Assembly (NCBI GenBank): GCA_002269645.1
Contig: NIVC01001295.1
Span: 67,285-131,284, forward strand
Reading direction: 5' to 3'
DNA length: 64,000 nucleotides
Source: Macrostomum lignano
Lineage: Eukaryota
The translations under genes were made by a program, and so were the position numbers. This document shows positions 16,314-48,588 of the stretch, piece by piece. The notes under the pieces are model-generated. The model saw only the letters and a list, made by a program, of their open reading frames with translations. It had not been told where the DNA came from and searched no databases. Every line of letters starts with the position of its first letter. Position 1 is the stretch's first letter.

Positions 16314-17460
16314 TCACAGGCTGCACGCACTCCGCAGCTGGTCGAACTGGGCCGCATCGAGGTTGCCAGTCAGCAGAGCCCAGCACTGCAGCCAGCCGTC
16401 GAACGGTTGGATTGCGGCTGACATGCAGCTGCCGATCAGAAGATTGTTGTGGACGTTGATAAAATTTCCTCCGACTACACTGGTCGATGTATCGATGGAA
16501 TTTATCATGGACCCATTGTAGTAGGCGTTGAATACGAAGTCCGTGCCTCCAAAGTTGATTCCAAAGCTCATCAGCCGCTCGACTGAGTCTCTAGCACAGC
16601 CACTTGTCCAGGTCTTGCTAATGTAAGTTCCAGAAGCAAACTGGACCCTAGCCTTGATGTTGCCGTCGCTTTTTATGTACAAATTAGTCGGATTTGTTGG
16701 GTTGTTGACATCGAGAAACGAGCTGATGCACTTGTCGCTGAAACATTGTGCAGGTGGTCGAAGTTTGATAAATTAAATTCTTGCTTGGACTTGAGCGCAA
16801 TTATTCAGTCACATACTCATACATAAATACTCACACAGAGTTGCAGGAAAACTTTCCCTGAAAGAACATGCTGTACTGCTTCCCAAATGCAAAATATTTG
16901 CTGAATTCGGCAGTCGAGACTTTCACGTAGGAGCCGCTCGAGCCCTGCAGACGAACTCCGTCGACTGGACTCTGCTCGGTGACGTTCACTGGTTCCGCCT
17001 GGTAAACTGATTGGTTGACGAAGTTTTTGAAGCTCTTCTTGAAGTTGTACCACAGCACGAAATTCGAGGACAAGTTCTGGATGACCGAAGCTTCCGACAG
17101 CGAGCTCGCAGGAGTGGCAGAAGTTGGCGCGCTCGGACCTACGGTGACTTCAGAAGCCAGCAGCCTTCTCCTAGCGACCATCCGGGACCCGCAGCTCCCG
17201 GTCGATGTCGGCATCGCAGACAACCTGTAGCAGACGGCCCTGTCTGTCAGGTACACAGACAGGCGACACTCGCCGCTGAGAGTGCAGAGCAGCGAGCACT
17301 CGGGCTCACTCGGCGCGGCCACAGCCTCAGCATTCACAGGCTCCGTGGGGCAGTCGCTGGTCAGCAACTCAAACACTGCGGAGCCGTGCTCGAGTGCCAC
17401 CGACTGGCACAGCACCAGCGAAAAAGCACAGGCAGTGAGCCAAATGACGGGTGAATTCAT
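16314..17460 (-). CDS. Secreted PAN/apple + LamG/ConA-like protein, copy 2 (349 aa)
   Basis: Exon 1 17460-16835, 97-bp intron, exon 2 16737-16314. Same splice phase as copy 1. Confidence 0.85.
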
Positions 17461-17637
17461 TATTAGATCAGTTTTATAACTGCATGTGCTTGTTGAGATT
17501 CTTGGAGAGAAACGACGTGTAGGAAATAATTCTCTTGGGAATCTGTTCAGGCTTTATCTTATTGGAAAGATACTTGCGAGGAACAAGGAAATTTCGTGTC
17601 GCATGCGATTGGAGGAAAAATTCCGGCATTACTGCAG

Positions 17638-17973
17638 CAGGGGCGTCGCCATGGTGGGGGGACAAAGCCAAGAATTCTAGCTACATGTACGTCCATATAC
17701 TCAAAATGGTTAGTCGCTGGGTATCTATCTAGGTATTTTCAGAATCGGTGTTGTCAGCTCTCTTTTTGGCGCTGCAGGCACTCATTAGCACCACAGGTAC
17801 TAATTAGCGCCACAGGCACTCATTTTGGCGCCGCAGGTGCCTTGTTTTGTCCCCCTGCAGCAAAAGTTTTGATTTCCATAACGGGTCGCAAGGTGGGATG
17901 GGGGGACAAAGCATTTGCATGACACCTTCATATCTTTTACTGGGGGACATGCCCCCCGGTGTAACGGCCCCTG
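17638..17973. mobile_element. hAT-type MITE upstream of copy 2
   Basis: Termini CAGGGGCGTC...ACGGCCCCTG. Absent at the homologous sites upstream of copies 1 and 4. The TSD is degenerate. Confidence 0.8.
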
Positions 17974-18525
17974 AGTGGAAGGCTTTGTGGTTGCTATGCA
18001 GGAAATAAAGAAGCCATTCTGTCGCTACCAATACTCGTCCGTTAGACCATATGTTTTTTTGCTTGAGCTGAGATGTTTTTTATCATAGAAAATGCAAAAG
18101 GATATTGAAAATGCTTTTAACATTTTCAGATAGGCGTTAAACATTAGGAAAAGAAATTTAAGAATGGCTTGGCTTTGCAGTACCTTTTAATAGAAATACG
18201 AGTAAGTTGTTTCTAAGTTGGGTCTAAGTTTTAAAGTGACCTAATACAATCACGACTCAGATGTGGCTCAGTGGACGCTGCTAGTGGCTCTGAATCATTA
18301 ATTTTTAGTTTCGACATCGTCAAGGCAAGAGCTGCTCTACAAACAACTTATAATCAATAATTCAAATGTCACGATTGCAAACTATTCATCAATTTCCATC
18401 GGCAAACCGAAATAATGAAAATCAAACTTGAAGATTTGCTTTCGGGAAAACAATTTCTTTATTTGAACGTCTTTCTTTCTAGCACGCGCTGTCATCGCTT
18501 CGTTTTCTTCCTTTCGTTTTAGAAT

Positions 18526-18585
18526 TAGCGCGCCCTGTGACGCTGACTTTTACCATCCTGACAGCGTATTTTGTTGTTGTTGTTG
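18526..18585 (+). mobile_element. Severely 5'-truncated RTE LINE (3' UTR plus (TTG)n tail)
   Basis: Matches the reverse complement of the RTE 3' end at 49190-49250. TSD tcgttttaga(a/g)t on both sides. Confidence 0.8.
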
Positions 18586-18725
18586 TCGTTTTAGAGTGCT
18601 TATTTTGGGCAGTAGTTTGGTGGTTGTTCTTCCTCCTAAAGCAAAATATTGGCTAATTTTCAGTATATTCTTCAACCAGAAAAAGGCTGCTTCTAAAGCG
18701 TAAAAATTCGTCTGAAACGTTTACC

Positions 18726-18995
18726 CAGGAGCGGATTTAGGGGGGCGGGGGGGACGGCGCCCCCCCCCCAAATAGCTTGACAGAACATATTGCGCCCCCA
18801 AAAACCTGAGTTTGCGCCCCCTAAACTTGATTTTTCGCCCCCAAAAGACATTTTTTGGCGCCCCTAAGCTTGACTTTTCGCCCCATACACGCATTTTTGA
18901 CGCCCCTAGCTTAAAAATTGGCGCCTCTTATACTCGTGTTGGCGCCCCAAACTTGGACCACCCCCCCCCAAAATGAAAATCTAGATCCGCCACTG
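18726..18995. mobile_element. hAT-type MITE
   Basis: TIRs CAGGAGCGGATTTAG / CTAGATCCGCCACTG; perfect 8-bp TSD CGTTTACC at 18718 and 18996. Confidence 0.9.
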
Positions 18996-19749
18996 CGTTT
19001 ACCCTTTGGGCTTTTATTCTAATGAAGCGATCGTTTCTATTTTCTACACCCAAGCCAGCCTCACCCAGGGCCATCTATTCCATAGCGACAGGGCAGCAGG
19101 GAGGGCCCGGACCCCACGCCTCATCGGATGCACCACTGGGACTTACGATGTCGCTGAATAGCCTGGGATTCTAAACCCCGACATGCAGCTGAGTTTGCGC
19201 AGCAAAACCCTGCTCAGCGTCCTGTCGAATAAACAACTCAAATTTCCTGGATGTTTTCGAAACTTCCGGAATCAAACGGTCTGGAATTTCTTGCGACTTT
19301 TGTTTCAATACTTCCCGTTTGTGCTATGGCTTCCTGCAATGTTGTGAAGCCTAGTCCTTGTCAGCTTAAGAATAATTCGAGCTATTCAGACAGTGAGAAA
19401 ACTGCTTCTTCATTCTTTATTTCCACTATGCAGCTCCCGCAAGGGTTTGGGATTGAGTCAAAAGATGACTGTCTGAAAGCTGGTCAAAATCTCTGGAAGA
19501 AGTTTTGCAAATTTTGCGAGCAATCTCTGACAGTAGCTATTACGTCGTAATATGAGTCTTGAACAGTCTAAAAGCATCCATCCACCAATATATGCGCACT
19601 TCTCATAATGCACATCTGGGTCAGATCCTAACGGAAGTGCACCAATGTACTCGTAATACTTGTATTGCTGCGCGCACCGACAAGAATTACAATTGGAACG
19701 ATGCTAGAACGCTGGAAGAATCTAGCACGCTGACGAGTGCGTCAATAAT

Positions 19750-22700
19750 GTAGTAGAGGCCGGGGCTGTTGCCCCCAGGACCCCAGGTCCTGCACGCAAT
19801 GGCGTGGTGAACTATCTGTGCAGTATGAGACTGGTATGGCCTCTATCCCAGCCAGCGATGCTCACACCTGCCTCTCCTGGCGGGCTGATAGCTCACGAGA
19901 CTCTGTCTCCTGATTTTCACCTTGCAAGGCGCACTTCGAAGGGTACTCGTCCCGTGGGTGTTAAGGCAGGCTCTTGGGCCTCGCCGAGCTGATTCATTAG
20001 CGCCGGGTCCTGGTGTGACCATATAAACGCACCCTCTAATGTCCCAGTGTAACTCCGTGCTCATGGACGCTTGGCCAGGGAGTAGTCTGGTCGCTAACGG
20101 TTCCCCTTGCGCTTTTGGGTCCCCCGCAGGATGGTAAGGTTTGCTTTTTGGGGCCTGTCGCTTGGTTTGGGGTTGCGGCCTTGCGGCTCTTTGCCTGTGT
20201 TCTGCAGGAAGTCCCACCTTTTTACTTTCAGCCAATGGCTTCTAACCGAAGTAACCAACCGGCTGTGGATGACACAGTGCCTCCGGCCTCGGCTGGGGCC
20301 GTGGACTCCGCGGCCACACGATCTGCTACCATCGGGGACGCCTCGGCGAGACCCGTGGAACCAACTCTGAGCGGTGCCTCCGATAAGATACCTGCTACTC
20401 CAGCTGGGCACGCCTCTGCACATTCATTCAAATGCAATGAGGGACTCGTGCCCTCTCATTTGGCCTAGTGATGCTGACTCGGGTCGGCGGCTCCTTGAGC
20501 TGCTGCCCGAGCAGAGCTGGGACCTCAACTTAGCCTTCTGCAGAGAGGACGAACGTCCCCGGACCAAGAGGCATCGAATCTGGGTTCCGGCCAGGAGCGT
20601 CGTTACCTCTGCTGACGAGCTCCGGAAAGGACTGCTAGCAGTCAACCGGGAGCTTCCCGCCGCGGGCCTAGTGGTGCATGATACCCTTAAGCGCAGCGAC
20701 GGCACTGGCTTCACAGCCATCCTGGGGCTGTCGGACGCCTGGATGGCGCTATCCGCACGGCAGCTTCATCAACGTCGGCCTTTGGAAGCTGCGCATCCGC
20801 TCCTACGAGGCCGACCCTCCCCTTGGCAGTGAGCAGAGCTGGCGGGATGCTGAGGCGGCCGGGGCCGAGGCGGGAGCTTCTGCTCAGGCTGCCAAAGCAA
20901 ACCGCCTCGCCCGGCAGCACGGCCGCGCGGGTAAAGTCGAACGCGCTGCTGAGGGCGGAGGCGACCGACGCCCGGCGCGCAGCACCAAGCGGCGCGGCCT
21001 GTACCAGCGCGCAGCTGAGGCAGTCCGTACCGCCAAAATCACCCAGCTGAGGCGAGAGGTCACCGGGATGCCTAGGCGCACCAGCTCGTCCAGGGAGAGT
21101 GGGGACGTCTCAGCTGGGCCCAACCCCTCGGGGCAGGGCCGACTGGAGACGGACCCGCCTGCCCAGGCGGCTGGCTGCAACTGGCTCCAGGGCATTGGGC
21201 CAGTCGGAAGCGGAGGACCCCGTGGCCGGTGGGCGAAGGGCGGCGAACGCTGCCTATTTCCTTCCGACCAGTCGGGGGCTTTTTGCTGAAGAGGAGCCCA
21301 TGGACACCGGCGACCCCGACCTAAGCTGGTGAGCGCCGAGGAGGAGGAGGAACTCCTGGCGACTGCAACACCCGATCTGCACTGATAGCAGCGGCTACCT
21401 GGTGTCTGCAGATCAACACCCAGCACTGCGTGGCGGCGTCAGTCAACCTGATGCGCACGACAGAGCAACAGCTTCCGGGCCTGGTCTTCGTGCAGGAGCC
21501 CTGGATGACTAAAGGTAAGCCAAATAATGTGCCATCTGGCAACCACTGTTTTTGCATGGCGGACTCTCAGCCTCGCCCAAGATCTCTGGTCTTTGCTGCA
21601 AAAGCTTTTAAGACATGGATGAGACCTGATCTCTCTACTGGGGACGTCTGTGTTGTTTCAAATCAATAACCTCATTCCAAATAAACCTGTGCTGGTAGCA
21701 TCTACCTATTTCCCAGGCGATGCCCCAACAGTCTGCGACGCACTAGTCAACCTCATTGACTACGCCGCGTCCCGCCGGTTCGAGCTGCTCATTGCAGGGG
21801 TTGTGAACGCACACCACCTGCATTGGGGCAGCAAGAACACAAATAACAGAGGCGAGGAGCTGCTGGCCTACGTCAGCAGCACAAACCTCAATTTCTGTAA
21901 CGTGGGCAATGCACCAACGTTCAATAATGGGCGGTGGGCCGAAGTCATTGACACCACCATCGCCTCACCCGGACTGTTTTCCGCAGTCACGGGCTGGCGA
22001 GTGTGGGACGAGGACTCGCTCTCGGACCACCGCTTCATCCGCTTTTACATTGGGCCGACCAAGCAAAAGCTTAAGGTCTCTTGGAGTCGGAACGTCAGGA
22101 ACACCGATTGGGCCGCCTTTGGCTCGAAGCTGAGCCGCGGCCTTCGGGATCTTGATCCCCCAGTGACCTCTCTGACTGCCAGGTGGTGGATGATCTCGCC
22201 TCCTCCTTGGGCGGGGCGATCACCACTGCCTTTGAAGCAGCCTGCCCTCTAAAGACCTATAAAGGCAAGAAATCTGCTCCCTGGTGGAACCCAGAGCTCG
22301 GGGCCCTTCGGCGCCGAGCCAGGACCCTCCAAAGGCGAGCGCTCAAAACCAAAGACCCATCTGATATAGAGGCCTATACCCGTGCGATCCACGAGTTTAA
22401 GGGCCAAGTCAGAATGTCCAAGACGGCCAAGTGGCGCCAATATTGCAAAGGGCTTGAGGGCTTTCGCCCCGTAGCCCGCGTGGTTAAGGCACTCACTAAC
22501 GACCGTTTTTCTAAACTCTCTGTTGTGAAGAGACCTGATGGCTCGGTCACAGAGAGCTCGGAAGAGACTCTAGTAGAGCTAATGCTCAACAGTTTCTTAC
22601 CTAAATCTCCGACTCAGCAGGGCCCGCCCGACCACACAGTGGGAGGGCAAGGCCTAGCAAAGTCTATGATCACCAAAGACCGCATTATTAGAGCGGCAAG

Positions 22701-23541
22701 GTCCTTTCACCCGTTCAAGGCGCCTGGGCCCGATGGCATCTACCCAGCGTTCTTGCACGAGGCGGTGAAAAACCACCGTTTCCTGGACCTGCTCTGTCGT
22801 CCCCTTCGAGCTTGTGTGGAGCTGGGCTATGTACCAGTTGCGTGGAGAGAGGCTCGGGTGGTCTTTATCCCCAAGCCTGGAAAGAGCGACTACCAATCGG
22901 TGAAGGCCTTCAGGCCTATCAGCCTCACTTCTTTCTGCCTCAAGCTCTTCGAGAGACTGGTACTTTGGCGCCTACTTTCGGTCGAGCAGAAGCGCTTCCC
23001 ACTCTCGCAGAATCAGCACGCCTTCCGCGCGGGCAGGTCTACCGAGAGTGCCCTCCATGTCATCGTTGACTTCCTGGAGAGGGCCGTTCTTGGCAGCGGC
23101 TTTGCCCTCTCGCTTTTCCTGGACATTGAGGGGGCCTTCGACAACGTCATCTTCGAGGCCTTCTGCAGAGCCCTGGAATCCAGGGCCACGAACTCTCACC
23201 TTGTCCGGTGGATCATGTTCATGATCCGGAACCGCAGTGTTGTGGCCCACCTGAACGGCAGCTCTCTTTCGGCGCCTGTCCAGAAAGGGGCCCCCAGGGC
23301 GGAGTTCTCTGGAACATGGTCATGGATGAGTTGCTTTGCAGTGATCTCCACGACCCCATTCTCAAGGTGGGCTGTGCCGATGATGTGACCGCGATATGCG
23401 CGGGCCCCTCGGTTGATACCATCAGAGACCTTCTGCAGGGCTTTCTGGGACGAGCGGAGCGTTGGGCAAACCAATGTGGCATTAGACTCTCAGAGTCGAA
23501 AATCACAGCGGTCATGTTTACCAACAAACTGCTCTGGACCA
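19750..23541 (+). mobile_element. Non-LTR retrotransposon, LOA/R1-like, frameshifted and 3'-truncated
   Basis: Broken ORF1 at ~20236-21289. APE endonuclease motifs: CLQINTQHC, VFVQEPW, NAHHLHWGS, SDHRFI. RT motifs: KAPGPDGI, FRPISL, QHAFRAGRST, LDIEGAFDNV, with catalytic YADD present as CADD. The 5' boundary is approximate. Confidence 0.85.
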
Positions 23542-23545
23542 TTAA

Positions 23546-26330
23546 CCTCTTCCACACTAATGCCTTAGGGTTTCACTCACGCAAGTGACGGATGGTACGC
23601 ATAGCGTACCATAGAATATTTTGTGGCCGCAAAAATTTTGGCAGCACACCCTTAAGTGCCGGCTAGGCGGGAATTTTTCGCTTTGCCTATCTTTCTTTCT
23701 TTACGAGCGGCTTATTATTTTACGGCGTTTATAATCGTTTGATTTCGATCTTCTTTAATTCACAGCTCCACCGATTGACCGCCTGGTTTGTGTGTTTCTT
23801 TATTACGGTTAATTTTATTTTTCCTGTGTTACTTTTTATACTATTTTGTGTTTGAACATTTTAGTACGCTTTCCATTTGTGTATATATCCTGTTTGTAAA
23901 GTTATAGGCTTTATTTTGTATCGCTGTTACATTATAAGTTATTTAAATTAGCTAGAGCTTTTTGTATCGAATATGGCCATGCAGTTTATTCGTCAAGCTC
24001 TTGTGGGTCTTCGTGGTGGGCCAGCTGAGGTCTCAAGCGATTCTGATGACAGCTCCGAGGACGAGATTTTAGAGGAGGAATCTATGGATGAAGATGTGAC
24101 TGAAGAACAAGGCGATGATGCTGAAATGCAGTGGCGAGGCGTGACTGAGGAGACGGATACACGAGAAAGCGCTGATGTGGAATTTTTCGGTGTTGAAGGC
24201 CTGAATCATGAAGTTCACGTTCCCGCCGACGTTGAGAATGGAATCGGAAGTTTCTTTTCAATGTTCGTTACTGACGATCTATTGGAAATGTTATGCAAGT
24301 TTACCAATGCTAGGGCATGGGCCGAGGTGCATTCATGCGAAGAAGATGGTCTTGGTCAAATGCCTGCAAGGTTGTCAGCTTGGCGCGATTGCACAATTTC
24401 CGAGATGAAAAAGATGCTAGCCATAATCATGTACATGGGTGTCGTCAAAAAGCCCGACATGCGTGCATATTGGTCCACTGATGAGTTTTACGGCAGCAGC
24501 CTGTTTCAAGGCGAGTTTTGCATCGCTCGAGAGCGCTTCCAACAAATCCTCTCCTTCTTACGCTTCTATGATTGCCAGGACAACACGAACGCTGACGATC
24601 CACTAAGAAAGGTGCGCCCATTCCTGCAATATGTTTGCCAAATTTGCAAAAGAAACTACTCACCAGGCAGGGAAGTTGCGGTCGACGAGGAGCTGGTTCT
24701 TCATAAGGGCCGGCTCATTTTCAAGCAGTATATTCCTAAGAAGCGGGCTCGCTTTGGAATAAAAACCTACTGCCTCGTCGACGCCAAAACCGGCTATCTC
24801 TGGAATATACTCGTTCATTCAACACCGGATGAAAATGCTCGCTTCGGAGAGGGCCTGGGCTGCGCTGAACTCAGCATAACTGAAAGAATTGTTGTTGAGC
24901 TCATGCAAGATCTTTTCGGCTTAGGCTACCAAGTATTCACTGATAGTTTTTTTCACGTCAATTCGACTTGCCAGTTTTCTTCTCGAGAAAGGCACCACAA
25001 TCACCGGTTCAGTCCAGGCAAATCGAGGCATCCCAGACTCGCTTAAGACTGCTAATATTCCAGCTCCCGGCTTTCGCTTCATGCGTAAAGGTGATGTCCT
25101 GGCAATAAAGATGACCGACAAGAAGGCAAGTGGCGTTAAGACTTTGCATCTCCTCGACACTCACGGTGTTGCCGGCTCGGTCGAGCGACAGACCATCCGC
25201 CGCGGAGGGCTAGTGCAGCTGGTTAGGAAGCCTACGAGCGTTGCGAACTGCACCAAATTCATGGGAGGAGTCGATAGACTGGACTCGTGTCTCCAACCGT
25301 ACCACCCTAACAGGAAGACATACCGATGGCATCAAAAGTTAGCGCTCCATCTGATGTTTCAACTGGTGCACAATTCCTGGGTTGCCTACCGAATTTCAGG
25401 TGGATCCCGGCCTTTTCTGCGATTTTTGGAAACCTGCATCACTTGGCTAATGAGGAGCAAGGGCACTGGGAAGCTGCGGTGCATGCGGACGACGCCTGCT
25501 ACACACGCTGGTGACGGACACTTTCCTTCGAAGCTCCCACCTACCCAGGGAAATCCACGTCCGTCTAAGCGCTGTCGCGTCTGCTACAGAAATTGAGTAT
25601 CAAAGCGCACAGTGACCGTCTGCAAGGGTTGTGTGAATCAGCCGGGACTGTGCATTGGAGACTGTTTCGAGCAGTGGCACGTTTAAGTGCAGTCCCTGGT
25701 TCGTGTGACTTCTCAGCCAGCGTTTAGAGCTTACACAAGTTTGCGCAACTTATCCTGTGCAATGTACGAAACTTGAGTATGTATCGTTGTTTATTATTCT
25801 CGTTCTAATGTCAGATGTGGATTAGATATTGCAAAAAGCTGTCATCATGATTTACGAAGCATCAACGGGCGAGCCTATTGGATTGCTGCATATTTCGCAA
25901 GGAGATGTCGTTGGTTTGTCGTCTTCTGAGATTGGCGAGCGAATCCGGCGAAGGCGACTATGCAAGGCATGCTGAACGATCTGGCTCAGTTGGATGTGAA
26001 TGAAATCGAGGCGCTGTTAGCTGGTCAAGACCGGAACGAGACTTGCTCAGGGAGATGGATGTAATGCAACTCGACACTACGCCAAAGTCAGTTCTGTTGC
26101 AAGAAAAGTGGGCACTTCGTAAGTTCACATTCAACAACTGCCAATTCCACGTGCATATTTCGAACATGCCTTGATCCGGCGTACAGCTTGGACCGATTTG
26201 TGCTAAATCCGTTGATTGTTTTGTTTATATTAGGTTTTTATAATGTTACAAACTTGTTTTTTTATATTAAGTTTTTATAATGTTACAACTGCTAAATATA
26301 GCATTAAATAGATAGCTCAGACGTTGGCTT
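23546..26330 (+). mobile_element. piggyBac-like DNA transposon, right end not found
   Basis: Begins CCTCTT directly after TTAA (23542-23545), where LINE homology stops. Encodes a piggyBac transposase. The right boundary is approximate. Confidence 0.7.
23973..25686 (+). pseudogene. piggyBac (PGBD4-like) transposase with two lesions
   Basis: DDD triad in VAVDEE, TDSFF and GGVDRLD. An extra T in the T7 run at 24947-24953 shifts the frame. TGA at 25594-25596 interrupts the C-terminal Cys-rich domain (RCRVCYRN*VSKRTVTVCKGCVNQPGLCIGDCFEQWHV). Confidence 0.9.
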
Positions 26331-32346: not shown

Positions 32347-32523
32347 TATTAGATCAGTTTTATAACTGCATGTGCTTGTTGAGATTCTTGGAGAGAAACG
32401 ACGTGTAGGAAATAATTCTCTTGGGAATCTGTTCAGGCTTTATCTTATTGGAAAGATACTTGCGAGGAACAAGGAAATTTCGTGTCGCATGCGATTGGAG
32501 GAAAAATTCCGGCATTACTGCAG

Positions 32524-32859
32524 CAGGGGCGTCGCCATGGTGGGGGGACAAAGCCAAGAATTCTAGCTACATGTACGTCCATATACTCAAAATGGTTAGT
32601 CGCTGGGTATCTATCTAGGTATTTTCAGAATCGGTGTTGTCAGCTCTCTTTTTGGCGCTGCAGGCACTCATTAGCACCACAGGTACTAATTAGCGCCACA
32701 GGCACTCATTTTGGCGCCGCAGGTGCCTTGTTTTGTCGCCCTGCAGCAAAAGTTTTGATTTCCATAACGGGTCGCAAGGTGGGATGGGGGGACAAAGCAT
32801 TTGCATGACACCTTCATATCTTTTACTGGGGGACATGCCCCCCGGTGTAACGGCCCCTG
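32524..32859. mobile_element. hAT-type MITE upstream of copy 3
   Basis: Duplicate of 17638-17973. Confidence 0.8.
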
Positions 32860-33450
32860 AGTGGAAGGCTCTGTGGTTGCTATGCAGGAAATAAAGAAGC
32901 CATTCTGTCGCTACCAATACTCGTCCGTTAGACCATATGTTTTTTTGCTTGAGCTGAGATGTTTTTTATCATAGAAAATGCAAAAGGATATTGAAAATGC
33001 TTTTAACATTTTCAGATAGGCGTTAAACATTAGGAAAAGAAATTTAAGAATGGCTTGGCTTTGCAGTACCTTTTAATAGAAATACGAGTAAGTTGTTTCT
33101 AAGTTGGGTCTAAGTTTTAAAGTGACCTAATACAATCACGACTCAGATGTGGCTCAGTGGACGCTGCTAGTGGCTCTGAATCATTAATTTTTAGTTTCGA
33201 CATCGTCAAGGCAAGAGCTGCTCTACAAACAACTTATATTCAATAATTCAAATGTCACGATTGCATGGTCCGACCGGGCGTAGCTTGGTTGGGTGTTAAA
33301 CCAGTGGGGCGTCGCTCTTGTGCGTTGGTACGGGGGGTGGTGGGCCTGGCCTTGGTCACGTGCCCGCGGCCTGGGTGGCGTTTATTTAATACGGTGCGGG
33401 CTGTCGCTGACCCGCCAAGCGCGTATTGATTTTTTTTCTCAATTTTTGCA

Positions 33451-34569
33451 ATGGCTGACCGCGACAAACTTATGCACCTGAGCAAGGTGGCTCTGCTAGC
33501 CTTGTGTGCCAACGCTAACATAAGCAGTCGGGGCAACAAGGCCGACCTTGTCAGCGCCCTGCTCGCAGCCCCAGACCAGTCGTGGACAGATTCGCTGTTG
33601 CAGAACATGGAGCAATCTGAGCAAGAAGCCGAAGCAGACGACAACATCAGTACGGAGGCGGCTCGGGAGTCGGCGGCGGGCCTGGACGAGGACATCGCGA
33701 AGGCGGAGAAGGAGATCAGACTGTTGCAGCTACGCAAGGAAGCCGCTCAACTCAAGAGGGAGATCGGAGATCTGCAGCGCGAGTGTCCATCCACGCGTCC
33801 TATGAATCGCGGTGAGTGTGCCAAGCCTGCTGGCCCCAGTTACTTTCCTGATGGGTGTGATGATGCTGAATTAGACCAAGCAGATAATGGCAATGAGCTG
33901 CTTGACAGATTGTTGTCACAGAACAGGGCCAATGAACGGATGGAGTGTTCTGGTAGACGTAAGGCTCTCCTGGTTCGTGATTTCCTCGACGGCTTTGAGC
34001 AGGAAGAGGTGCTGGCTAATGGTTCTGGTGGCCGAATCACTTACAAGAGCAGAAAACCTAATCCAGATAGCATCACGGCAGCGCAGTATTTGGTAGGCAA
34101 TTGCAGGCTGATGATGCAGATGATCAAGGATGGTGCCCTGGTGACTAGTAGAAATGGAACTGCCGACACGACTGATTTGATGAATTACTTACGCTACTCA
34201 ATACAGATTGGCGAGCTGTTTGACGCGGGCTTCGGCCTTGCGCAGGTGAATCGTTTTGACGAGGACTACCGCACTAGGCAAGCTGAAACTGGCATGCGAT
34301 GGGGCAAGGAGTCTTTCCAACTCGTTGCTAAGCACTTAATCAGAACTGGAACTCCAGCAAACCATGGAGTCAGCAAGTCATTGCCCCAGCCACGGCAGCA
34401 GCGTTTTCAAAAACCAATAGACCCCAAGAGCCTCAGAACGCCAGACGGGGAAGAGATCTGCTTGCACTTTAATCGCCGGGGGTGCTTCCGGTCGAGCTGC
34501 AAATTCCGGCACGTATGCCGCATCTGTTTCGAGGCCCACCCTGAGGCCAACCATTCGACAAAAAACTGA
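33451..34569 (+). CDS. DIRS/Ngaro gag-like ORF (372 aa, intact)
   Basis: N-terminal SAP/HeH-like helices (LALCANANISSRGNKADLVSALL) and a C-terminal CCCH/CCHH zinc-finger region (ICLHFNRRGCFRSSCKFRHVCRICFEAH). Confidence 0.75.
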   Translation: MADRDKLMHLSKVALLALCANANISSRGNKADLVSALLAAPDQSWTDSLLQNMEQSEQEAEADDNISTEAARESAAGLDEDIAKAEKEIRLLQLRKEAAQLKREIGDLQRECPSTRPMNRGECAKPAGPSYFPDGCDDAELDQADNGNELLDRLLSQNRANERMECSGRRKALLVRDFLDGFEQEEVLANGSGGRITYKSRKPNPDSITAAQYLVGNCRLMMQMIKDGALVTSRNGTADTTDLMNYLRYSIQIGELFDAGFGLAQVNRFDEDYRTRQAETGMRWGKESFQLVAKHLIRTGTPANHGVSKSLPQPRQQRFQKPIDPKSLRTPDGEEICLHFNRRGCFRSSCKFRHVCRICFEAHPEANHSTKN

Positions 34570-34577
34570 AGTCTGCG

Positions 34578-35292
34578 ATGCTCTGTTTTAATCCTAAAAT
34601 TTTGCCTAATGCTCAGCCTGCTTTAAATTTTAACAATCCTGTCGTTGGCAGTGCAGGGGGTCGCCTGCGTTTTTGTTCGTGGGATTCTGAGCTTGAGAAT
34701 GACCCTGATCGGAATTTTATCCTAGACGGCATCGCAAATGGTTTTCGCATTACTGATGGCAAAGGGCTTTGTGAGACTTTTAATGCCAATTACATGTCTA
34801 CTTCTGCTTTTCATCGCGCTGTTGAGCTGCAAATTAAAGAAGAGATTGAGAATGGCAGGTATTTGATTGTGCCTAAGAAGCCTACGATGGTCAGCCCTCT
34901 GGGAGCAATTCCCAAGGATAACGGGAAGGTTCGACTTATTCATGACTGCAGCACGCCTCCGGGCTACTCGGTAAATGACAACTATACGAAGAAGCTGAGC
35001 CCCAGGTTTGAGTCCGTCAAGAAGGTTGCTGCCTCTATCGGCAAGGGCTGGTTCATGGCAAAGCTTGATTTGTCGCAAGCTTACAGAAGCGTGGCGATCC
35101 ATCCGGATGATTACCAGGCGACCGGCATTGGTTGGCGCTTTAAAGGCAACCGTGATCTGACATGGCTTGTCGACACCCGGCTACCCTTTGGTAGCTGCGC
35201 CTCGGTCGAGATTTTCTACCGGCTTAGTCAAGCGGTCAAGAGGATGATGGTGCGACGCGGCGTGGCCAATATTTCGGTTTACATGTTGAAAC
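34578..35292 (+). pseudogene. DIRS/Ngaro reverse transcriptase, truncated just before YxDD
   Basis: SPLGAIPKDNGKVRLIHDCS, AKLDLSQAYRSVAIHP and RLPFG. Homology ends at ISVY. Confidence 0.85.
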
Positions 35293-35453
35293 AATGTCAC
35301 GATTGCAAACTATTCATCAATTTCCATCGGCAAACCGAAATAATGAAAATCAAACTTGAAGATTTGCTTTCGGGAAAACAATTTCTTTATTTGAACGTCT
35401 TTCTTTCTAGCACGCGCTGTCATCGCTTCGTTTTCTTCCTTTCGTTTTAGAAT

Positions 35454-35513
35454 TAGCGCGCCCTGTGACGCTGACTTTTACCATCCTGACAGCGTATTTT
35501 GTTGTTGTTGTTG
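35454..35513 (+). mobile_element. RTE LINE tail (duplicate of 18526-18585)
   Basis: Perfect 12-bp TSD tcgttttagaat. Confidence 0.8.
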
Positions 35514-35653
35514 TCGTTTTAGAATGCTTATTTTGGGCAGTAGTTTGGTGGTTGTTCTTCCTCCTAAAGCAAAATATTGGCTAATTTTCAGTATATTCTT
35601 CAACCAGAAAAAGGCTGCTTCTAAAGCGTAAAAATTCGTCTGAAACGTTTACC

Positions 35654-35930
35654 CAGGAGCGGATTTAGGGGGGGCGGGGGGGACGGCCCCCCCCCCCCCC
35701 CAAAATAGCTTGACAGAACATATTGCGCCCCCCAAAAACCTGAGTTTGCGCCCCCTAAACTTGATTTTTCGCCCCCAAAAGACATTTTTTGTCGCCCCTA
35801 AGCTTGACTTTTCGCCCCATACACGCATTTTTGACGCCCCTAGCTTAAAAATTGGCGCCTCTTATACTCGTGTTGGCGCCCCAAACTTGGACCACCCCCC
35901 CCCCAAAATGAAAATCTAGATCCGCCACTG
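35654..35930. mobile_element. hAT-type MITE (duplicate of 18726-18995)
   Basis: Same TIRs and 8-bp TSD CGTTTACC. Confidence 0.9.
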
Positions 35931-36110
35931 CGTTTACCCTTTGGGCTTTTATTCTAATGAAGCGATCGTTTCTATTTTCTACACCCAAGCCAGCCTCACC
36001 CAGGGCCACCTATTCCATAGCGACGGGGCAGCAGGGAGGGCCCGGACCCCACGCCTCATCGGATGCACCACTGGGACTGACGATGTCGCTGAATAGCCTG
36101 GGATTCCAAT

Positions 36111-36831
36111 CCCAAAAAAAGGTAACACTTTGTGCGCTCACTGTGAGTGAGCAGTTAGGCCTATACCACAGTAATTTAACAGGTCCTTCCAGAGGCGAGT
36201 TATTGAGCACAGAAGTGTAGATTGGCTGGCCAATCGCTGTTAGCGGGGCCGGGGGGCTTGTCGTCGCCCGTGTTTGGGGGTGCTTGGTCCGGGGGTGGGT
36301 GCGCCGCCCCCGGGGCGGGGGTGGGTGTCTGTGGGGCCTTTTTAGCCCCGTGGGTTGTGCCTGCCTCAGGCTATCTCTCCTCGCCAGCTTGCATGCGTTT
36401 TTTTCTGCTTTTAGCCCCCTTTCTCGCAATTCCTGCAACTTCCTTTTTTCCTTTCGCTTCGTTTACCTTTTACTCTTCCAAATAGTTTTTTCGAATGCTT
36501 TCCAAATATACTCGTGTCTCGTAAATTGCCCATACAGGGCGGTAGGATGTTTTGCTCGTGCTCTCCAATCCTTGCCTTTGCTCTCTCCCTCCGGCCGTTC
36601 CGCTAAGTGTACGCTAGCTTTTCTGCCAAGCTTTGCCATACACAGCTGCCATAGACAATCTAAAAGCTAGCGTACACTTCTGTGCTCAATAACTCGCCTC
36701 TGGAGCAATTTTTCGCAACCAAATGTTTGTGGGAAAAACTTACAAATGTTTACTATGGACCTGTTAAATTACTGTGCTATATGCCTAACTGCTCACTCAC
36801 AGTGAGCGCACAAAGTGTTACCTTTTTTGGG
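36111..36831. mobile_element. Non-autonomous DNA transposon with long TIRs (CCC...GGG termini, possibly CMC/EnSpm-like)
   Basis: cccaaaaaaaggtaacactttgtgcgctcactgtgagtgagcagttaggc...aacaggtcc is mirrored at 36757-36831. A second inverted block tccagaggcgagttattgagcacagaagtgta lies further inside. No TSD. Confidence 0.8.
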
Positions 36832-37223
36832 ACACCCGTTACAGAACTGTCAATCCCGCTTGCAGAGTCAAACGGGCACCACTCAGCTATTCTTTACTAC
36901 ATCATTATAATGTATCATGCGGATTAAACTTGTGATAATCACTTGCAAAAATGTAATATCAATAGTCAATACACTTTGCATTGCGAAAATACTCTCATGC
37001 ACTACATCTACAAGCGTATTAATTATCTACAATCTTCTGAAATCTTGCATGCACGGACTGGTTGAAAAATAGGGAAGCAGCTCCGCTGGGTAGGGGAGCC
37101 GAGCCGGCTCCAAAAAAAATTTAGAGTAGGAGTTTGGGCTGTGGGGATGGAGCCCCGCTAAGACAAACTTAAAGTAAGAGTTTGGGGTGTGGGGATGGAG
37201 CCCCCGCTAAGACAAACTTAAAG

Positions 37224-37581
37224 GGGGGCCGTAGCCCAGCGGTAGCGCAGCTGCTCTGGTGTGCCAGCGACCCAGGCTCGATTCCAAGTGCAGCCACATT
37301 AATTTGGGGCTGAATTGGAATTTCGGCTTGGCTCGCCTGTGCAATTAACGGCCTTGAGAGCCAACCCCCCAAGGCGCAGTGAAGTGTACATGCCTAACAA
37401 TTGATAAAGTTAGGGCCGCTGTACACTCCTGTGTGAGTGTGTGCCTGCGTAACGTATCCGCGCGCTTGTATGCCTGCTCAGGGGAGTCGGGCGGAATGGG
37501 CAGTAATGCCTCTCGCCGGTTGTGTGCCTATGTCGCCTAAAGTGCGCCAGGGTGCACACAACCCCCCTGCCTCTAAAAAAA
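37224..37581 (+). mobile_element. tRNA-derived SINE (duplicate of 27050-27406)
   Basis: Same head, A tail and 14-bp TSD. Confidence 0.85.
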
Positions 37582-38040
37582 AGACAAACTTAAAGTAAGA
37601 GTTTGGGGGCGTGGGGTGGGGTGGAGCCCCCGCTAAGACAAACTTAAAGTAAGAGTTTGGGGGCGTAGGTTGGGGTGGAGCCCCCTCTAAGACAAACTTA
37701 AAGTACAATAAGAGTTTGGGGGCGTGGGGTGGAGTCCCCGCCAAGGCAAACTTTAAGTAAGAGTTTGGGGGCGTGGTGGTGGAGTACCCGCCAAGGCAAA
37801 CTTTAAGTAAGAGTTTGGGGGCGTTGGGGTGGAGTACCCGCCAAAGCAAACTTTAAGTAAGAGTTTGGGGGCGTGGGGGTAAAGTACCCGCCAAGGCAAA
37901 CTTTAAGTAAGAGTTTGGGGGCGTGGGGTGGAGTCCCCGCCAGGGCAAACTTTAAGTAAGAGCTTGGGAGCGTGGGGGTGGAGTACCCGCCAAGGCAAAC
38001 TTTAAATAAGAGTTGCGAGGAGTGTTGGGGCGGAGCGCAC
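37582..38040. repeat. G-rich minisatellite (duplicate, one more unit)
   Basis: Same unit as 27407-27810. Confidence 0.9.
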
Positions 38041-38558
38041 CACCAAGCCTAATTAAATTAATAGTTTTGGAGACTATATAATTCCGGTCATTACATTTGC
38101 TATTTGCTCCCACTTTAGCGGGAGCAATCTGGAATCATCTACTACTCGTAGTTTCCAAGGAAGTGAACGGACGCACGGGGTCTTGAACTCTTGCTCTCCG
38201 TTGGATGGCTTTTAGCTGTCATTTCCCTCTACTGTCGTCTCTGTTTTTCATTGTACTTTTAAAAACAAGTTCCAATTTTTTTAAAATAAAAAAGTGAAAC
38301 AATACATTAAAATGATCGTGTCTTTCTGAGCTACTTCAAGTAATGCATGCATGTTATTATTAGCTAGCTCGTATTAAAAATTGACAATTTTTTAGAACTT
38401 TTACTGACACATCATATTGTTGCTAGTATTAGTAGTATTATCTCAGTAAAACTTTTTAGTAATACGCACGTACAGCACTAGGAAAGCAATATGGCTGCTC
38501 CTTCCGGTGTGCAACAAAGCGTGATACATTGATAAAACAGGCTAACAGGTGCTATTCA

Positions 38559-38837
38559 CAGGGGTGTCGACATTGATTTTATGGTGGGGGACAAAGAAAT
38601 AAATTTTACTTGTACATGCACATGACTGAATTCCTCTATTTACATGATTTTGAGAATCGGTATTGTCAGCACTCATTTTAGCGTCACAATTGCTAAACTT
38701 TAGCGCTCTGAAACAAATCTATTGCTTTACTCAACGGGTAATAAGGTGGGGTGAGGGACAAAACATTATCATGTCCCCCATAGCTCATACTGGAGGGGGA
38801 CATCTCCCCCCTGTCCTACCCGGTGGCGACGCCCCTG
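38559..38837. mobile_element. hAT-type MITE (duplicate of 28330-28608)
   Basis: Same termini and flanks. Confidence 0.8.
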
Positions 38838-38896
38838 GCTGTTCTTAAACTTGCAATTCAGAAGATGCTAAATGTACGAGTACTAACTCCACAGTC

Positions 38897-40019
38897 CACG
38901 GAAAGGCGCTTGACTCGGTGTTGAGAGCCGCTCTCCCCTTTGTCCTTCGAGCCTACCGGGTGCCCCAGCAGCTAATCGACGCTGTCATGGCGCTGTATTG
39001 CGATACTCGAGCTGCTGTGGTGACGGCGGACGGCCTGTCTGACCTGTTCGACACTTCATCAGGAGTTCTGCAGGGAGACACTTTGGCGCCGTTCCTCTTC
39101 GTGCTGCTCCTGGACTGGGTGCTTCGGACCGCACTCCCCTCGGCTAATGACGGCTTCCTGCTGCGCAGACGCATCGGTCGCCGCCACGGCGAAAAGCGCC
39201 TAAGCGTGCTTGGCTACGCCGACGATCTCGCCCTACTGTCCTCGTCTGTTGAAGGCGCCCAGCGCCAGATCGACAGGTTGGTCGAGGTAGCATCGAGCGT
39301 CGGTCTGGTTGTCAACACGCTGAAGACCGAGGTGCTGACTGTGCCGGCCGACATCCCAGCAGACCTGACATGCCGCGGCGCAGACGGGCAGACGACCAGG
39401 CTCGCACGCTGCCAGCGGTTCACCTACCTCGGCGGTCTGGTGCTTCAAGTGGAGGAAGACCTCCGGCGGCGCAGAGGACTTGCCTGGGCGGCCTTTCGTT
39501 CGATCCGAGCCGTCCTCCAGTCTGAAGCGCTGCCCGACCGCCAGAGGGCTCGGCTGTGGCAGGCGGTGGTCGAAACAGTCCTGCTCTACAACGCCGAGAC
39601 GTGGACGCTGACGGCTACGCTGGAGCGGCAGCTGGACTCGGCGCACTCAGGGCTGCTCCGTGCGGCCTTTCGAGCTGACGAGAGCGTCGGGACCGAGGCC
39701 CTGTACGATCGGGCCAAGCTGCAGCGCCCGTCCATCATCCTGCTCCGATGGCGACTCCAACTGGCGGGCCACGTGATCCGGGCCGAGGGCTACTGCCCCC
39801 AACCTGTTCAGGACGTCCTGCTGCTCACCTTGCAGGGCCCGTTCAGGCGGGGTCAGGCCCGAACCCGTCGATACGTGGACTGCCTGCTGTGCGACGCTGG
39901 GGCGCCCGACACTGCTAACGGAGCGGACTTCGTTCGCTCCCAGGCTCTGCGGCGCGCCATCTGACGCGCCCTGCTCTAACTGACTTTGCACGCGGGGCCG
40001 CGTATTTTGTTGTTGTTGT
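38897..40019 (+). mobile_element. 5'-truncated RTE-clade LINE, uninterrupted copy
   Basis: ORF 38918..39964 with YADD and thumb motifs; (TTG)n tail; TSD acagtc. Confidence 0.9.
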
Positions 40020-40533
40020 ACAGTCGGAACACGAAAGAAGCCAGACGCGAACACAAATATGAGAGAGCGATCAAAAATGCCCCAAAGACTTGCGACAGTT
40101 AAAACCAAGGAGTTCTATAATTAGCAATCATAGATTATTAGTTTAACGCGAAGAGTATAAAAAGCGATCGCAAACAACTAAAGGAAAAGAAAAACTTGAC
40201 TAAAAGACAAGCTTGTATAAATAAGGATAAATGAGACCACAAAAGATTAAAAAAATTAAATCCAACACAGACAGACAAAGCCAACTGAATCAACGCGAAA
40301 AGGCCTTGAAATCAGATCAGGCAGATAGGCGCAAAAGGGAGGGGCACGACGGAGGGAGAGAAAGTGTACAAGGCTTGGCTCCGGAAAACAAAGCTTGGTA
40401 AAGAAATTAGAAATTTTCTAAGGTATATTTGAATGTTTAAACTCTTGCTAAATAGTTTATCGATAAATGGTTCGTTTTCAGTAAATTAGTTGTCGATGCC
40501 ATTTCTGCGCTCTTTCGTCTTCTAATTTTTGCA

Positions 40534-41683
40534 TCACAGGCTGCACGCACTCCGCAGCTGGTCGAACTGGGCCGCATCGAGGTTGCCAGTCAGCAGAGCC
40601 CAGCACTGCAGCCAGCCGTCGAACGGTTGGATTGCGGCTGACATGCAGCTGCCGATCAGAAGGTTGTTGTGAATGTTGGAAAAATTGCCTCCTCCGGAAA
40701 AAACCATCGACATATGAATAGACTTCATCATGGATCCATTGTAGTAGGCGTTGGATGAGAAGGTCATACCTACGAAGTTGATTCCAAAGCTCGTCAGCCG
40801 CTCGACTGAGTCTCCAGCACAGCCACTTGCCCAGGTCATTAAGGAACTACTGAGAGTACCAGAAGCAAACTGGACCTTAGCAGTGATGTTGCCGTCGCTT
40901 TTTATGTACAAATTAGTTGGGGTTGTTGGATTGTTGACATCGAGAAACGAGCTGATGCACTTGTCGCTGAAACATTGTGCACGGCTGATCGAATGTTCGT
41001 AAATAAATCCTTTTTTGATAGAAACCTAATTATTCAGTCATATACATAAATACTCACACAGAGTTGCAGGAAAACTTTCCCTGAAAGAACATGCTGTACT
41101 GCTTCCCAAATGCAAAGTATTTGCTGAATCCGGCAGTCGAGACTTTCACGTAGGAGCCGCTCGAGCCCTGCAGACGAACTCCATCGACTGGACTCTGCTC
41201 GGTGACGTTCACTGGTTCCGCCTGGTAAACTGATTGGTTGACGAAGTTTTTGAAGCTCTTCTTGAAGTTGTACCACAGCACGAAATTCGAGGACAAGTTC
41301 TGGATGACCGAAGCTTCCGACAGCGAGCTCGCAGGAGTGGCAGAAGTTGGCGCGCTCGGACCTACGGAGACTTCAGAAGCCAGCAGTTTTCTTCTAGTGA
41401 CCATCCGGGACCCGCAGCTCCCGGTCGATGGCGGCATCGCAGACAACCTGTAGCAGACGGCTCTGTCTGTCAGGTACACAGACAGGCGACACTTGCTGCT
41501 GATAGTGCAGAGCAGCGAGCACTCGGGCTCACTTTGGGCGGCCACAGCCTCAGCATTCACAGGCTCGGTGGGGCAGTCGCTGGTCAGCAACTCAAACACT
41601 GCGGAGACGTGCTCGAGTGCGACCGACTGGCACAGCACCAGCGAAAAGGCACAGGCAGTGAGCCAAATGACGGATGACTTCAT
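40534..41683 (-). CDS. Secreted PAN/apple + LamG/ConA-like protein, copy 4 (352 aa)
   Basis: Exon 1 41683-41058, 91-bp intron, exon 2 40966-40534. Confidence 0.85.

Positions 41684-42979: not shown

Positions 42980-48588
<5,609 letters not shown>

What the first reader, a model, noticed from the sequence alone, without database searches (positions are those of the whole stretch)
16835..41057. Copy 3 is an anti-Lepore-type chimera made by unequal crossing-over between copies 2 and 4
Seen: on the plus strand the order is [E2x E1b] spacer [E2y E1b] spacer' [E2y E1a], which is the product expected from an unequal crossover within the genes. The crossover maps to about 31704-31779. Copy 3 carries the copy-4 6-bp intron deletion at ~31704, but copy-2 bases at 31780 and 31793. 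The two spacers have since gained independent insertions, which argues against a simple assembly duplication.
Basis: partly seen in the sequence, partly recalled or inferred. Interest (0 to 1): 0.75.

Follow-up and report, generated by a model that had tools for sequence, protein, structure and literature searches.

The report
Hybrid gene in flatworm tandem array
In a four-gene tandem array of a secreted protein in the flatworm Macrostomum lignano, the third gene is a clean hybrid of its two neighbours, as unequal crossing-over would produce, but the sequence alone cannot show whether this happened in the animal or is an assembly error in this hidden-polyploid genome.

Summary
The window is Macrostomum lignano DNA with four intact two-exon paralogues on the minus strand (c1-c4). 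Copy 3 matches copy 4 through exon 2, the intron and about 5 kb of left flank. It matches copy 2 through the 5' part of exon 1 and about 3 kb of right flank. Of 128 informative sites, 63/65 are c4-like, then 60/60 are c2-like (0/10000 permutations). The two spacers are colinear throughout, apart from private transposon insertions. Gene order and hybrid polarity fit an anti-Lepore product.

Two corrections:
- **Exchange point.** The safe interval is 31705-32030. The 184-bp tract 31847-32030 is at least as likely as 31704-31779.
- **Private insertions.** They do not argue against an assembly artefact. The units differ by 1.0% in substitutions and 46% in private TE sequence, the published level between the three M. 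lignano subgenomes, whose assemblies are heavily chimeric.

The amino-acid differences between c3 and its parents (C18Y, G185E) already exist as variants in other copies. In ten database family models, no other E1b+E2y chimera exists. A real inter-haplovariant crossover (~0.5) and a register-shifted mis-assembly (~0.4) predict the same sequence. Only long reads or depth can decide.

The parts
9917..11063 (-). Copy 1 (context, not part of the duplication): exon 1 11063-10438, intron 97 bp, exon 2 10340-9917; 349 aa
   Evidence: Gene model. The protein is identical to UniRef A0A1I8FWC3 of Macrostomum lignano.
16314..17460 (-). Copy 2, a parental gene (E1b + E2x): exon 1 17460-16835, intron 97 bp, exon 2 16737-16314; 349 aa
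   Evidence: The protein is identical to UniRef A0A1I8G3A5.
31197..32346 (-). Copy 3, the hybrid gene (E1b + E2y): exon 1 32346-31721, intron 91 bp, exon 2 31629-31197; 352 aa, ORF intact
   Evidence: The exact protein is absent from the 15-billion-protein collection.
40534..41683 (-). Copy 4, a parental gene (E1a + E2y): exon 1 41683-41058, intron 91 bp, exon 2 40966-40534; 352 aa
   Evidence: The exon-2 CDS is identical to that of c3, 0 differences in 433 bp.
31705..32030 (.). Exchange zone inside exon 1 of copy 3. All four copies are nearly identical here. The sub-tracts of perfect c2/c4 identity are 31705-31779 (75 bp), 31794-31845 (52 bp) and 31847-32030 (184 bp, the longest in the gene).
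   Evidence: One search gives the site string and identity tracts. One search gives the codon effects of 31780, 31793, 31846 and 32031.
16961..31846 (.). Duplication unit 1 (14,886 bp): c2 5' part of exon 1, spacer 1, c3 exon 2, intron and 3' end of exon 1
31847..41183 (.). Duplication unit 2 (9,337 bp): c3 5' part of exon 1, spacer 2, c4 exon 2, intron and 3' end of exon 1
19179..26703 (+). Unit-1-private 7.5-kb transposon nest (Z): LINE endonuclease and RT ORFs at 21650-23388, and piggyBac-like transposase ORFs at 23973-25596
   Evidence: Absent from unit 2. Pfam hits are Exo_endo_phos_2 5e-18, RVT_1 1e-11 and DDE_Tnp_1_7 3.5e-51.
29115..29998 (.). Unit-1-private 884-bp insertion (Y), flanked by the direct repeat CTGTG. 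It splits a LINE RT ORF that is continuous in unit 2 (38918-39964).
33266..35292 (+). Unit-2-private 2.0-kb retroelement fragment (X), flanked by the 15-bp target-site duplication AATGTCACGATTGCA. The empty site is at 18365-18379 in unit 1.
   Evidence: RVT_1 hit in ORF 34578-35450.
36112..36831 (.). Unit-2-private MITE-like element with 75-nt terminal inverted repeats (96% complementary), at the site where unit 1 carries Z
27406..27838 (.). 50-54-bp minisatellite in the shared spacer. Its counterpart is at 37581-38066, with a different copy number (7.5 against 8.5).

Best explanation
Copy 3 is the duplication-side (anti-Lepore-type) product of a non-allelic homologous exchange between copy 4 and copy 2 of a Macrostomum-specific secreted-protein gene array.

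The two genes were already diverged paralogues (6% in the 5' part of exon 1, 10% in exon 2). They paired out of register. The exchange resolved inside the block of exon 1 that is nearly identical in all copies (31705-32030). That duplicated the whole c2-c4 interval. It left an intact hybrid gene with the c2 promoter, signal peptide and PAN-like N-terminus, and the c4 variable half of the C-terminal jelly-roll domain.

The partners were most likely two already diverged haplovariants or subgenome copies, not sister chromatids. The private transposon insertions and the roughly 1% substitutions between the units would then mostly predate the event.

Shown: the mosaic, the colinearity and the intact ORF. 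Inferred: that the exchange took place in the animal and not in the assembler, and that the partners were different haplovariants.
For: - **Clean switch.** There are 128 informative sites, 63/65 c4-like then 60/60 c2-like, with 0/10000 permutations reaching the observed chi-square. Pattern counts by segment are 79 '12|34' sites on the left and 52 '14|23' on the right.
- **Flank homology.** It extends over kilobases on both sides and is colinear over the whole spacer.
- **Polarity.** In gene orientation the order is c4-c3-c2. The hybrid takes its 5' part from the downstream gene and its 3' part from the upstream gene.
- **Location of the switch.** It falls in the only stretch where c2 and c4 are about 99% identical, which includes their longest perfect tract of 184 bp.
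- **Integrity.** The hybrid ORF and splice sites are intact.
- **No gap.** The window has no N, and no other tandem duplication of this kind occurs in the 64 kb.
- **Family mosaicism.** Other UniRef members (P0004, P0010) combine a- and b-type residues, so ectopic exchange seems to be ongoing in the family.
- **Inter-haplovariant partners.** The only exon-1 amino-acid difference between c3 and c2 (C18Y) is carried by c2-type proteins P0013, P0012 and P0003. E185 is carried by c4-type proteins P0001 and P0008.
Against: - The same sequence would result if an assembler joined c4 of one haplovariant to c2 of another.
- The divergence between the units (1.0% substitutions, 46% private TE sequence) equals the published inter-subgenome divergence of M. 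lignano. Also, 36% of Mlig_3_7 length lies in subgenome-chimeric scaffolds (PMC10733133).
- In ten independent UniRef gene models of this family, E1b is always linked to E2x and E2y always to E1a. No c3-type protein exists there.
- Divergence is strongly heterogeneous along the units (chi-square 33, p 1e-6). That is not expected for a simple in-cis duplication followed by clock-like decay.
- The switch is not perfectly clean: 31793 is c2-like but 31846 is c4-like.
Confidence: 0.5

Rival explanations
1. Assembly artefact. The true locus has three genes (c1, c2, c4). Spacer 1 and spacer 2 are the same spacer from two different haplovariants or subgenomes (S, L1, L2). The assembler traversed the c2-c4 interval twice, switching from c4 of variant A to c2 of variant B through the near-identical exon-1 block. 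That would create a false tandem duplication and a chimeric 'copy 3'.
For: - The units differ by 1.0% in substitutions and by large private TE insertions (46% of sequence). This is the published signature of M. lignano subgenome divergence: 1.4-2.4% SNPs, 32-36% with long insertions.
- Wrongly expanded or collapsed haplovariants are reported for Mlig_3_7, and 36% of its length lies in chimeric scaffolds.
- Mlig_3_7 was built with Canu at errorRate 0.04 and Pilon-polished with Illumina and RNA-seq reads (PMC5730564). Exon 1 of c2 and c4 differ by only about 3.5%.
- Each half of c3 equals, at protein level, an attested parental-type gene from an independent annotation: the P0013 exon 1 (Y18), and the P0008 E185 plus E2y.
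- No E1b+E2y protein exists among the ten family models.
- c3 and c4 are identical over 573 bp spanning exon 2, where about 6 differences are expected (P = 0.003).
Against: - The join is seamless and in register inside a gene, with no N.
- A long-read overlap assembler would have needed a spurious edge through at most about 330 bp of 99% identity (626 bp at 96.5%). It would have had to prefer that edge to the true continuation.
- False haplotypic duplications usually sit at contig ends or gaps and have arbitrary junctions.
- No other such duplication is seen in the 64-kb window.
- The UniRef set is incomplete: the exact protein of copy 4 is also missing. So the absence of c3 there is weak evidence.
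Confidence: 0.4
2. An old in-cis duplication (sister-chromatid unequal exchange). All differences between the units, including the TE insertions, C18Y and G185E, arose afterwards.
For: The topology is the same as in the best explanation. The private insertions have target-site duplications and are genuine insertion events.
Against: - C18Y and G185E coincide with variants already present in c2-type and c4-type genes elsewhere. This reading would therefore need parallel mutation or later conversion.
- Divergence is very uneven among blocks, from 0.28% to 2.75% (p 1e-6).
Confidence: 0.07
3. There was no duplication by exchange. Copy 3 is an old independent paralogue whose two halves were overwritten by gene conversion from c4 and c2. 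Alternatively, the unit was duplicated by a non-homologous, replication-based mechanism.
For: Gene conversion is plausible in this family: all copies share a homogenised block in exon 1.
Against: - Homology at about 99% runs through the entire intergenic spacers (about 6.5 kb shared, including the same LINE fragment and minisatellite), far beyond any conversion tract.
- The unit boundaries fall at homologous positions of two paralogues. A non-homologous mechanism would hit these only by coincidence.
Confidence: 0.03

Closest known systems
Haemoglobin anti-Lepore chromosomes (for example Hb Miyada, Hb P-Nilotic): delta - beta/delta hybrid - beta (comparison from general knowledge)
   Same: - A hybrid gene sits between both intact parental genes.
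- The hybrid has the 5' end of the downstream gene and the 3' end of the upstream gene.
- The whole intergenic interval is duplicated.
- The exchange lies in a tract of high paralogue identity.
   Different: - The physical existence of the chromosome is not demonstrated here.
- No reciprocal (Lepore-type) deletion haplotype is known.
- The parental genes are Macrostomum-specific secreted PAN-like and jelly-roll proteins, not globins.
- The partners appear to have been diverged haplovariants of a neopolyploid genome.
Other NAHR hybrid genes in tandem arrays: red/green opsin hybrids, CYP11B1/CYP11B2 chimera, GYPA/GYPB hybrids, CFH/CFHR (from general knowledge)
   Same: The mechanism and outcome are the same: an in-frame chimera creates a new promoter and coding combination in a tandem family.
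   Different: Those cases are validated by population and molecular data. This one rests on a single assembled sequence.
Heterotype (haplotypic) false duplications in assemblies of heterozygous or polyploid genomes
   Same: - The two tandem copies differ at the level of allelic or homeologous divergence.
- The species and its assemblies are documented as prone to expanded, collapsed and chimeric haplovariants (PMC10733133).
   Different: - The junction is seamless and in frame, at paralogous rather than arbitrary positions.
- It is not at a gap or contig end within the window.

Membership tests
Anti-Lepore-type (duplication-side) unequal crossover product | The hybrid gene is flanked by both parental-type genes, in tandem and in the same orientation | tested here: met
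   c2, c3 and c4 are all on the minus strand, and c3 lies between them.
Anti-Lepore-type (duplication-side) unequal crossover product | The hybrid takes its 5' part from the downstream parent and its 3' part from the upstream parent (gene orientation) | tested here: met
   The gene-orientation order is c4-c3-c2. The c3 exon 1 and 5' flank match c2. The c3 exon 2, intron and 3' flank match c4.
Anti-Lepore-type (duplication-side) unequal crossover product | The whole inter-gene interval is duplicated, so the two spacers are colinear end to end | tested here: met
   All shared blocks are in the same order. The differences are four private TE insertion regions and a change in minisatellite copy number.
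Anti-Lepore-type (duplication-side) unequal crossover product | A single switch of parentage inside a tract of paralogue identity | tested here: inconclusive
   There is one switch at the scale of the gene. Within the 326-bp zone, 31793 (c2-like) and 31846 (c4-like) conflict. The conflict is resolved if the c4-type parent carried E185, as P0001 and P0008 do. Short-read polishing could also have altered single sites.
Anti-Lepore-type (duplication-side) unequal crossover product | The arrangement exists on one physical DNA molecule | not testable with these tools
   No reads or alternative assemblies could be retrieved.
Anti-Lepore-type (duplication-side) unequal crossover product | An ancestral two-gene haplotype and/or a reciprocal deletion haplotype exists | tested here: inconclusive
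   UniRef models show only the parental combinations (E1b+E2x, E1a+E2y), with about three variants of each gene. This fits arrays without c3 in the other subgenomes, but no linkage information is available.
Haplotypic false tandem duplication (assembly artefact) | The copies differ at the level of allelic or homeologous divergence for the species | tested here: met
   The units show 1.0% substitutions and 46% private TE sequence. The published subgenome values are 1.4-2.4% and 32-36%.
Haplotypic false tandem duplication (assembly artefact) | The junction lies at a gap, a contig end or an arbitrary position | tested here: not met
   There are no Ns. The junction is in register inside the paralogous exon 1.
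Haplotypic false tandem duplication (assembly artefact) | Read depth is halved over both copies and no spanning molecule exists | not testable with these tools
   No read data are available.
PAN/Apple domain proteins (Pfam PF00024) | A match to the PAN_1 profile above the gathering score | tested here: not met
   The score is 16.3-16.6 bits against a cut-off of 21.4 (E 0.007-0.009, residues 44-83). UniProt nevertheless names the relatives 'Apple domain-containing protein'. The domain is PAN-like only.
Concanavalin-A-like / lectin-like jelly-roll domains | A beta-sandwich jelly-roll fold in the C-terminal 230 residues | tested here: inconclusive
   The AF2 model has pLDDT 70-85 for residues 122-349, but the alignment had only 9 sequences. 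The Foldseek top hits are the lectin-like subdomain of clostridial neurotoxin binding domains (E 1e-7, TMq about 0.45, 10-17% identity). This is fold similarity only and gives no functional inference.

The most novel reading that the evidence does not exclude
The hybrid is real and arose by unequal exchange between two different haplovariants or subgenome copies of the neopolyploid M. lignano genome. That would be direct sequence evidence that the supposedly isolated subgenomes (L1, L2, S) still recombine ectopically. It would also show such exchange creating new expressed combinations of a c2-type promoter and N-terminus with a deeply diverged (dS 0.19-0.29) alternative binding-domain cassette in a lineage-specific secreted protein family.
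Probability: 0.2. Interest if true: 0.5.

Novelty: new member of a known kind. Interest (0 to 1): 0.27.

Why it matters
**If real.** This is a textbook-clean example of tandem arrays generating new genes by non-allelic homologous recombination. It would have caught the process soon after the event in a flatworm model. It would also bear on whether the three subgenomes of M. lignano still exchange sequence.

**If an artefact.** It is a concrete, checkable example of a false gene gain. Paralogous genes flanking a haplovariant bubble would have caused it. That matters for gene-family counts, and for knock-out or RNAi design, in this model organism.

Either way, the mechanism class is well known.

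Tried and rejected
1. **Retrieving the locus from other assemblies or runs.** Nothing was on record, so I could not test the structure independently at DNA level.

2. **The 'four-gamete' idea.** I considered whether c1 (E2x plus an a-like exon 1) is the reciprocal, Lepore-like product, or proof of a second recombination. I rejected it. In exon 1, c1 simply lacks both the c2-derived and the c4-derived states, giving a star tree with all pairwise distances near 5-6%. The apparent oddity of the c2 3' flank arises because its homology ends at 16293.

3. **Positive selection on the variable exon-2 core.** dN/dS is 0.58-0.70, not above 1, so this test shows no diversifying selection. The x and y cassettes are simply much older (dS 0.19-0.29) than exon 1 (dS 0.07).

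4. **Distant homologues.** A full phmmer scan of 1.84 billion representatives found only Macrostomum relatives at significant levels.

5. **UniProt accession order.** I considered using it as a proxy for linkage in the older assembly and dropped it as unreliable.

6. **Literature.** A search for this gene family in M. lignano found nothing.

Full report
**What the window is.** The sequence is eukaryotic, with many mini- and microsatellites and transposon ORFs. The protein encoded by the first gene copy is identical to UniRef A0A1I8FWC3. That of the second copy is identical to A0A1I8G3A5. Both are Macrostomum lignano 'Apple domain-containing protein' entries. The window is therefore genomic DNA of the free-living flatworm M. 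lignano. It contains no N.

**The genes.** Four paralogues lie on the minus strand, each with two exons and a 91- or 97-bp GT-AG intron:

| Copy | Exon 1 | Exon 2 | Length |
|---|---|---|---|
| c1 | 11063-10438 | 10340-9917 | 349 aa |
| c2 | 17460-16835 | 16737-16314 | 349 aa |
| c3 | 32346-31721 | 31629-31197 | 352 aa |
| c4 | 41683-41058 | 40966-40534 | 352 aa |

- All four ORFs are intact, and tblastn finds no further copy in the window.
- The protein has a signal-peptide-like N-terminus and a weak PAN/Apple-like stretch (16 bits, below Pfam's 21.4 cut-off).
- A low-complexity linker follows, then a C-terminal beta-sandwich of about 230 residues.
- AlphaFold2 models this domain at pLDDT 70-85.
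- Foldseek aligns it to the lectin-like jelly-roll subdomain of clostridial neurotoxin binding domains (E about 1e-7, TMq about 0.45, 10-17% identity). This is a generic fold resemblance and gives no functional assignment.
- A scan of 1.84 billion representative proteins finds significant relatives only in Macrostomum.
- Exon 2 encodes the second half of the jelly-roll. It comes in two deeply diverged forms: x (c1, c2) and y (c3, c4). They differ by 43 fixed substitutions and two in-frame indels. dS is 0.19-0.29, against 0.07 in exon 1, and dN/dS is about 0.6.

**Checking the observation.**
- Self-BLAST shows that c3 shares its left side with c4 (29999-32362 with 39338-41699, and 26704-29114 with 36840-39343).
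- c3 shares its right side with c2 (16300-18379 with 31183-33265, and 18365-19178 with 35293-36113).
- A four-way alignment gives 128 informative substitution sites between 31177 and 32523. The first 65 are c4-like except two c4-private sites. Then come 31780 (c2-like), 31793 (c2-like) and 31846 (c4-like). All 60 sites from 32031 onward are c2-like.
- The maximum chi-square is 116, and no permutation out of 10000 reaches it.
- The 6-bp intron deletion shared with c4 at 31703/31704 is present.

**Anatomy of the duplication.**
- With the switch placed at 31846/31847, the units are 14,886 bp (16961-31846) and 9,337 bp (31847-41183). They share about 6.5 kb in the same order.
- Unit 1 has two private regions. 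One is a 7.5-kb nest at 19179-26703 with LINE endonuclease/RT and piggyBac-like transposase ORFs. The other is an 884-bp insertion at 29115-29998, flanked by CTGTG. It splits a LINE RT ORF that is continuous in unit 2.
- Unit 2 also has two. One is a 2.0-kb retroelement fragment at 33266-35292 with a 15-bp target-site duplication. The other is a MITE-like element at 36112-36831 with 75-nt inverted termini.
- A 50-54-bp minisatellite differs in copy number between the units.
- Over aligned shared sequence the units differ at 61 of 6030 positions (1.0%). The spread is very uneven, from 0.28% to 2.75% by block (chi-square 33, p 1e-6). There are no differences over the 573 bp that include exon 2.

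**Polarity.** In gene orientation the order is c4, c3, c2. The hybrid has the promoter side and exon-1 5' part of the downstream gene (c2), and the exon 2 of the upstream gene (c4). Both parents flank it intact. That is the duplication-side (anti-Lepore) product of an out-of-register exchange, not the deletion-side (Lepore) product. Spacer-wide colinearity rules out gene conversion alone. The homologous position of the unit boundaries makes a non-homologous mechanism an unnecessary coincidence.

**Where the exchange lies.** Three points weaken this.
- 31780 (synonymous, Y189) is private to c4, so it says nothing about the source of c3.
- 31793 is the G185E site. c4-type proteins from an independent annotation (P0001, P0008) carry E185, so a c4-type parent could have supplied that base.

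A single exchange in 31847-32030 between an E185-bearing c4-type gene and a c2-type gene explains every site. One published assembly of this species was polished with short genomic and RNA-seq reads (PMC5730564). Single-site states inside a near-identical paralogous block may therefore be unreliable. The safe statement is 31705-32030.

**Real event or assembly product.** This is the crux, and the sequence alone cannot settle it.
- M. lignano DV1 is a neopolyploid with three subgenomes. They differ by 1.4-2.4% in SNPs and by 32-36% once long insertions are counted.
- 36% of the Mlig_3_7 assembly length lies in S/L-chimeric scaffolds, and wrongly expanded or collapsed haplovariants are reported (PMC10733133).
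- The two units here differ in the same way: 1.0% substitutions and 46% private transposon sequence.
- The only exon-1 amino-acid difference between c3 and c2 (C18Y) is present in c2-type proteins P0013, P0012 and P0003. The c3 combination of E185 with E2y is present in the c4-type protein P0008.
- Among ten database gene models of the family, E1b always goes with E2x and E2y with E1a. c3 is the only E1b+E2y combination, and its exact sequence is absent from the 15-billion-protein collection.
- These facts make an old in-cis duplication with later mutation unlikely.
- They fit two scenarios equally. One is a real unequal crossover between two diverged haplovariants. The other is an assembler walking c2, spacer(A), c4(A) | c2(B), spacer(B), c4(B) through the shared exon-1 block. 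Both yield the identical sequence.
- For a real event: the seamless in-frame junction at the longest identity tract, the absence of gaps, the absence of other such duplications in the window, and evidence of mosaicism in other family members (P0004, P0010).
- For an artefact: the documented state of the assemblies, the missing c3-type protein, and the perfect identity of c3 and c4 across exon 2.
- The missing-protein evidence is weak, because the exact protein of c4 is also absent from the database.

I put a real non-allelic exchange at about 0.5 plus 0.07 for the in-cis version, the artefact at about 0.4, and other mechanisms at about 0.03.

**Comparison with what is known.** The arrangement meets the sequence-level criteria of an anti-Lepore-type product: position, polarity, spacer colinearity, and a switch in an identity tract. 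The criteria I could not test are physical existence on one molecule and the existence of ancestral or reciprocal haplotypes. Unequal crossing-over in tandem arrays is well known from globins, opsins, CYP11B, glycophorins and CFH/CFHR. If real, this is a new member of a known kind.

**Verdict.** Interest is modest. The finding becomes more interesting only if it proves to be a real inter-subgenome exchange in this neopolyploid.

Noticed in passing
window 31197-31629, 40534-40966 (E2y) versus 9917-10340, 16314-16737 (E2x): Exon 2 exists as two deeply diverged cassettes, x and y. They differ by 43 fixed substitutions and 6-bp and 3-bp in-frame indels (dS 0.19-0.29, dN/dS about 0.6). The 3' half of exon 1 is nearly invariant in all four copies (3 variable sites in 326 bp among c2-c4). 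This suggests either homogenisation of exon 1 by gene conversion or long-term maintenance of two alternative binding-domain halves.
   Followed up: partly
UniRef relatives P0001, P0004, P0007, P0010: Other M. lignano family members are themselves mosaics of a- and b-type exon-1 residues. Some carry a 6-aa insertion (TTPSNP or TAPSNP) in the linker. P0001 has a third exon-2 variant (z). There are about three variants per gene, which fits three subgenomes.
   Followed up: partly
window 43543-45238: A very long pure (TAAC)n microsatellite: 424 copies, 97% matches, 1.7 kb. It accounts for the strong GC and AT skew in 44-46 kb.
   Followed up: no
window 53920-55467: A 1.5-kb degenerate 22/34-bp minisatellite (GCAACTGTGTGT-type units). 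It is followed by an unusually GC-rich stretch at 56001-58000 (66.8% GC) with long ORFs at 56573-57808 and 57916-58725, which I did not examine.
   Followed up: no
window 3943-4488, 12966-13425, 48195-48447, 51004-51450, 62291-62985: Several further high-identity minisatellites (45-, 31-, 33-, 31- and 24/56-bp units). This agrees with the published 15% simple/tandem repeat content of this genome.
   Followed up: no
window 23973-25596: A piggyBac-like transposase (DDE_Tnp_1_7, E 3.5e-51), split into two ORFs, is nested next to a LINE (endonuclease plus RT, 21650-23388) inside the unit-1-private 7.5-kb block.
   Followed up: partly
window 16100-16293: Downstream of its stop codon, c2 loses homology to the other three copies at 16293. 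c1, c3 and c4 stay alignable for about 85 bp more, so the c2 3' flank was replaced by an indel or rearrangement.
   Followed up: partly
window 5394-6506: There is a 370-aa ATG ORF on the plus strand upstream of the array, and a 480-aa ORF overlapping the 45-bp minisatellite at 3122-4564. I characterised neither.
   Followed up: no
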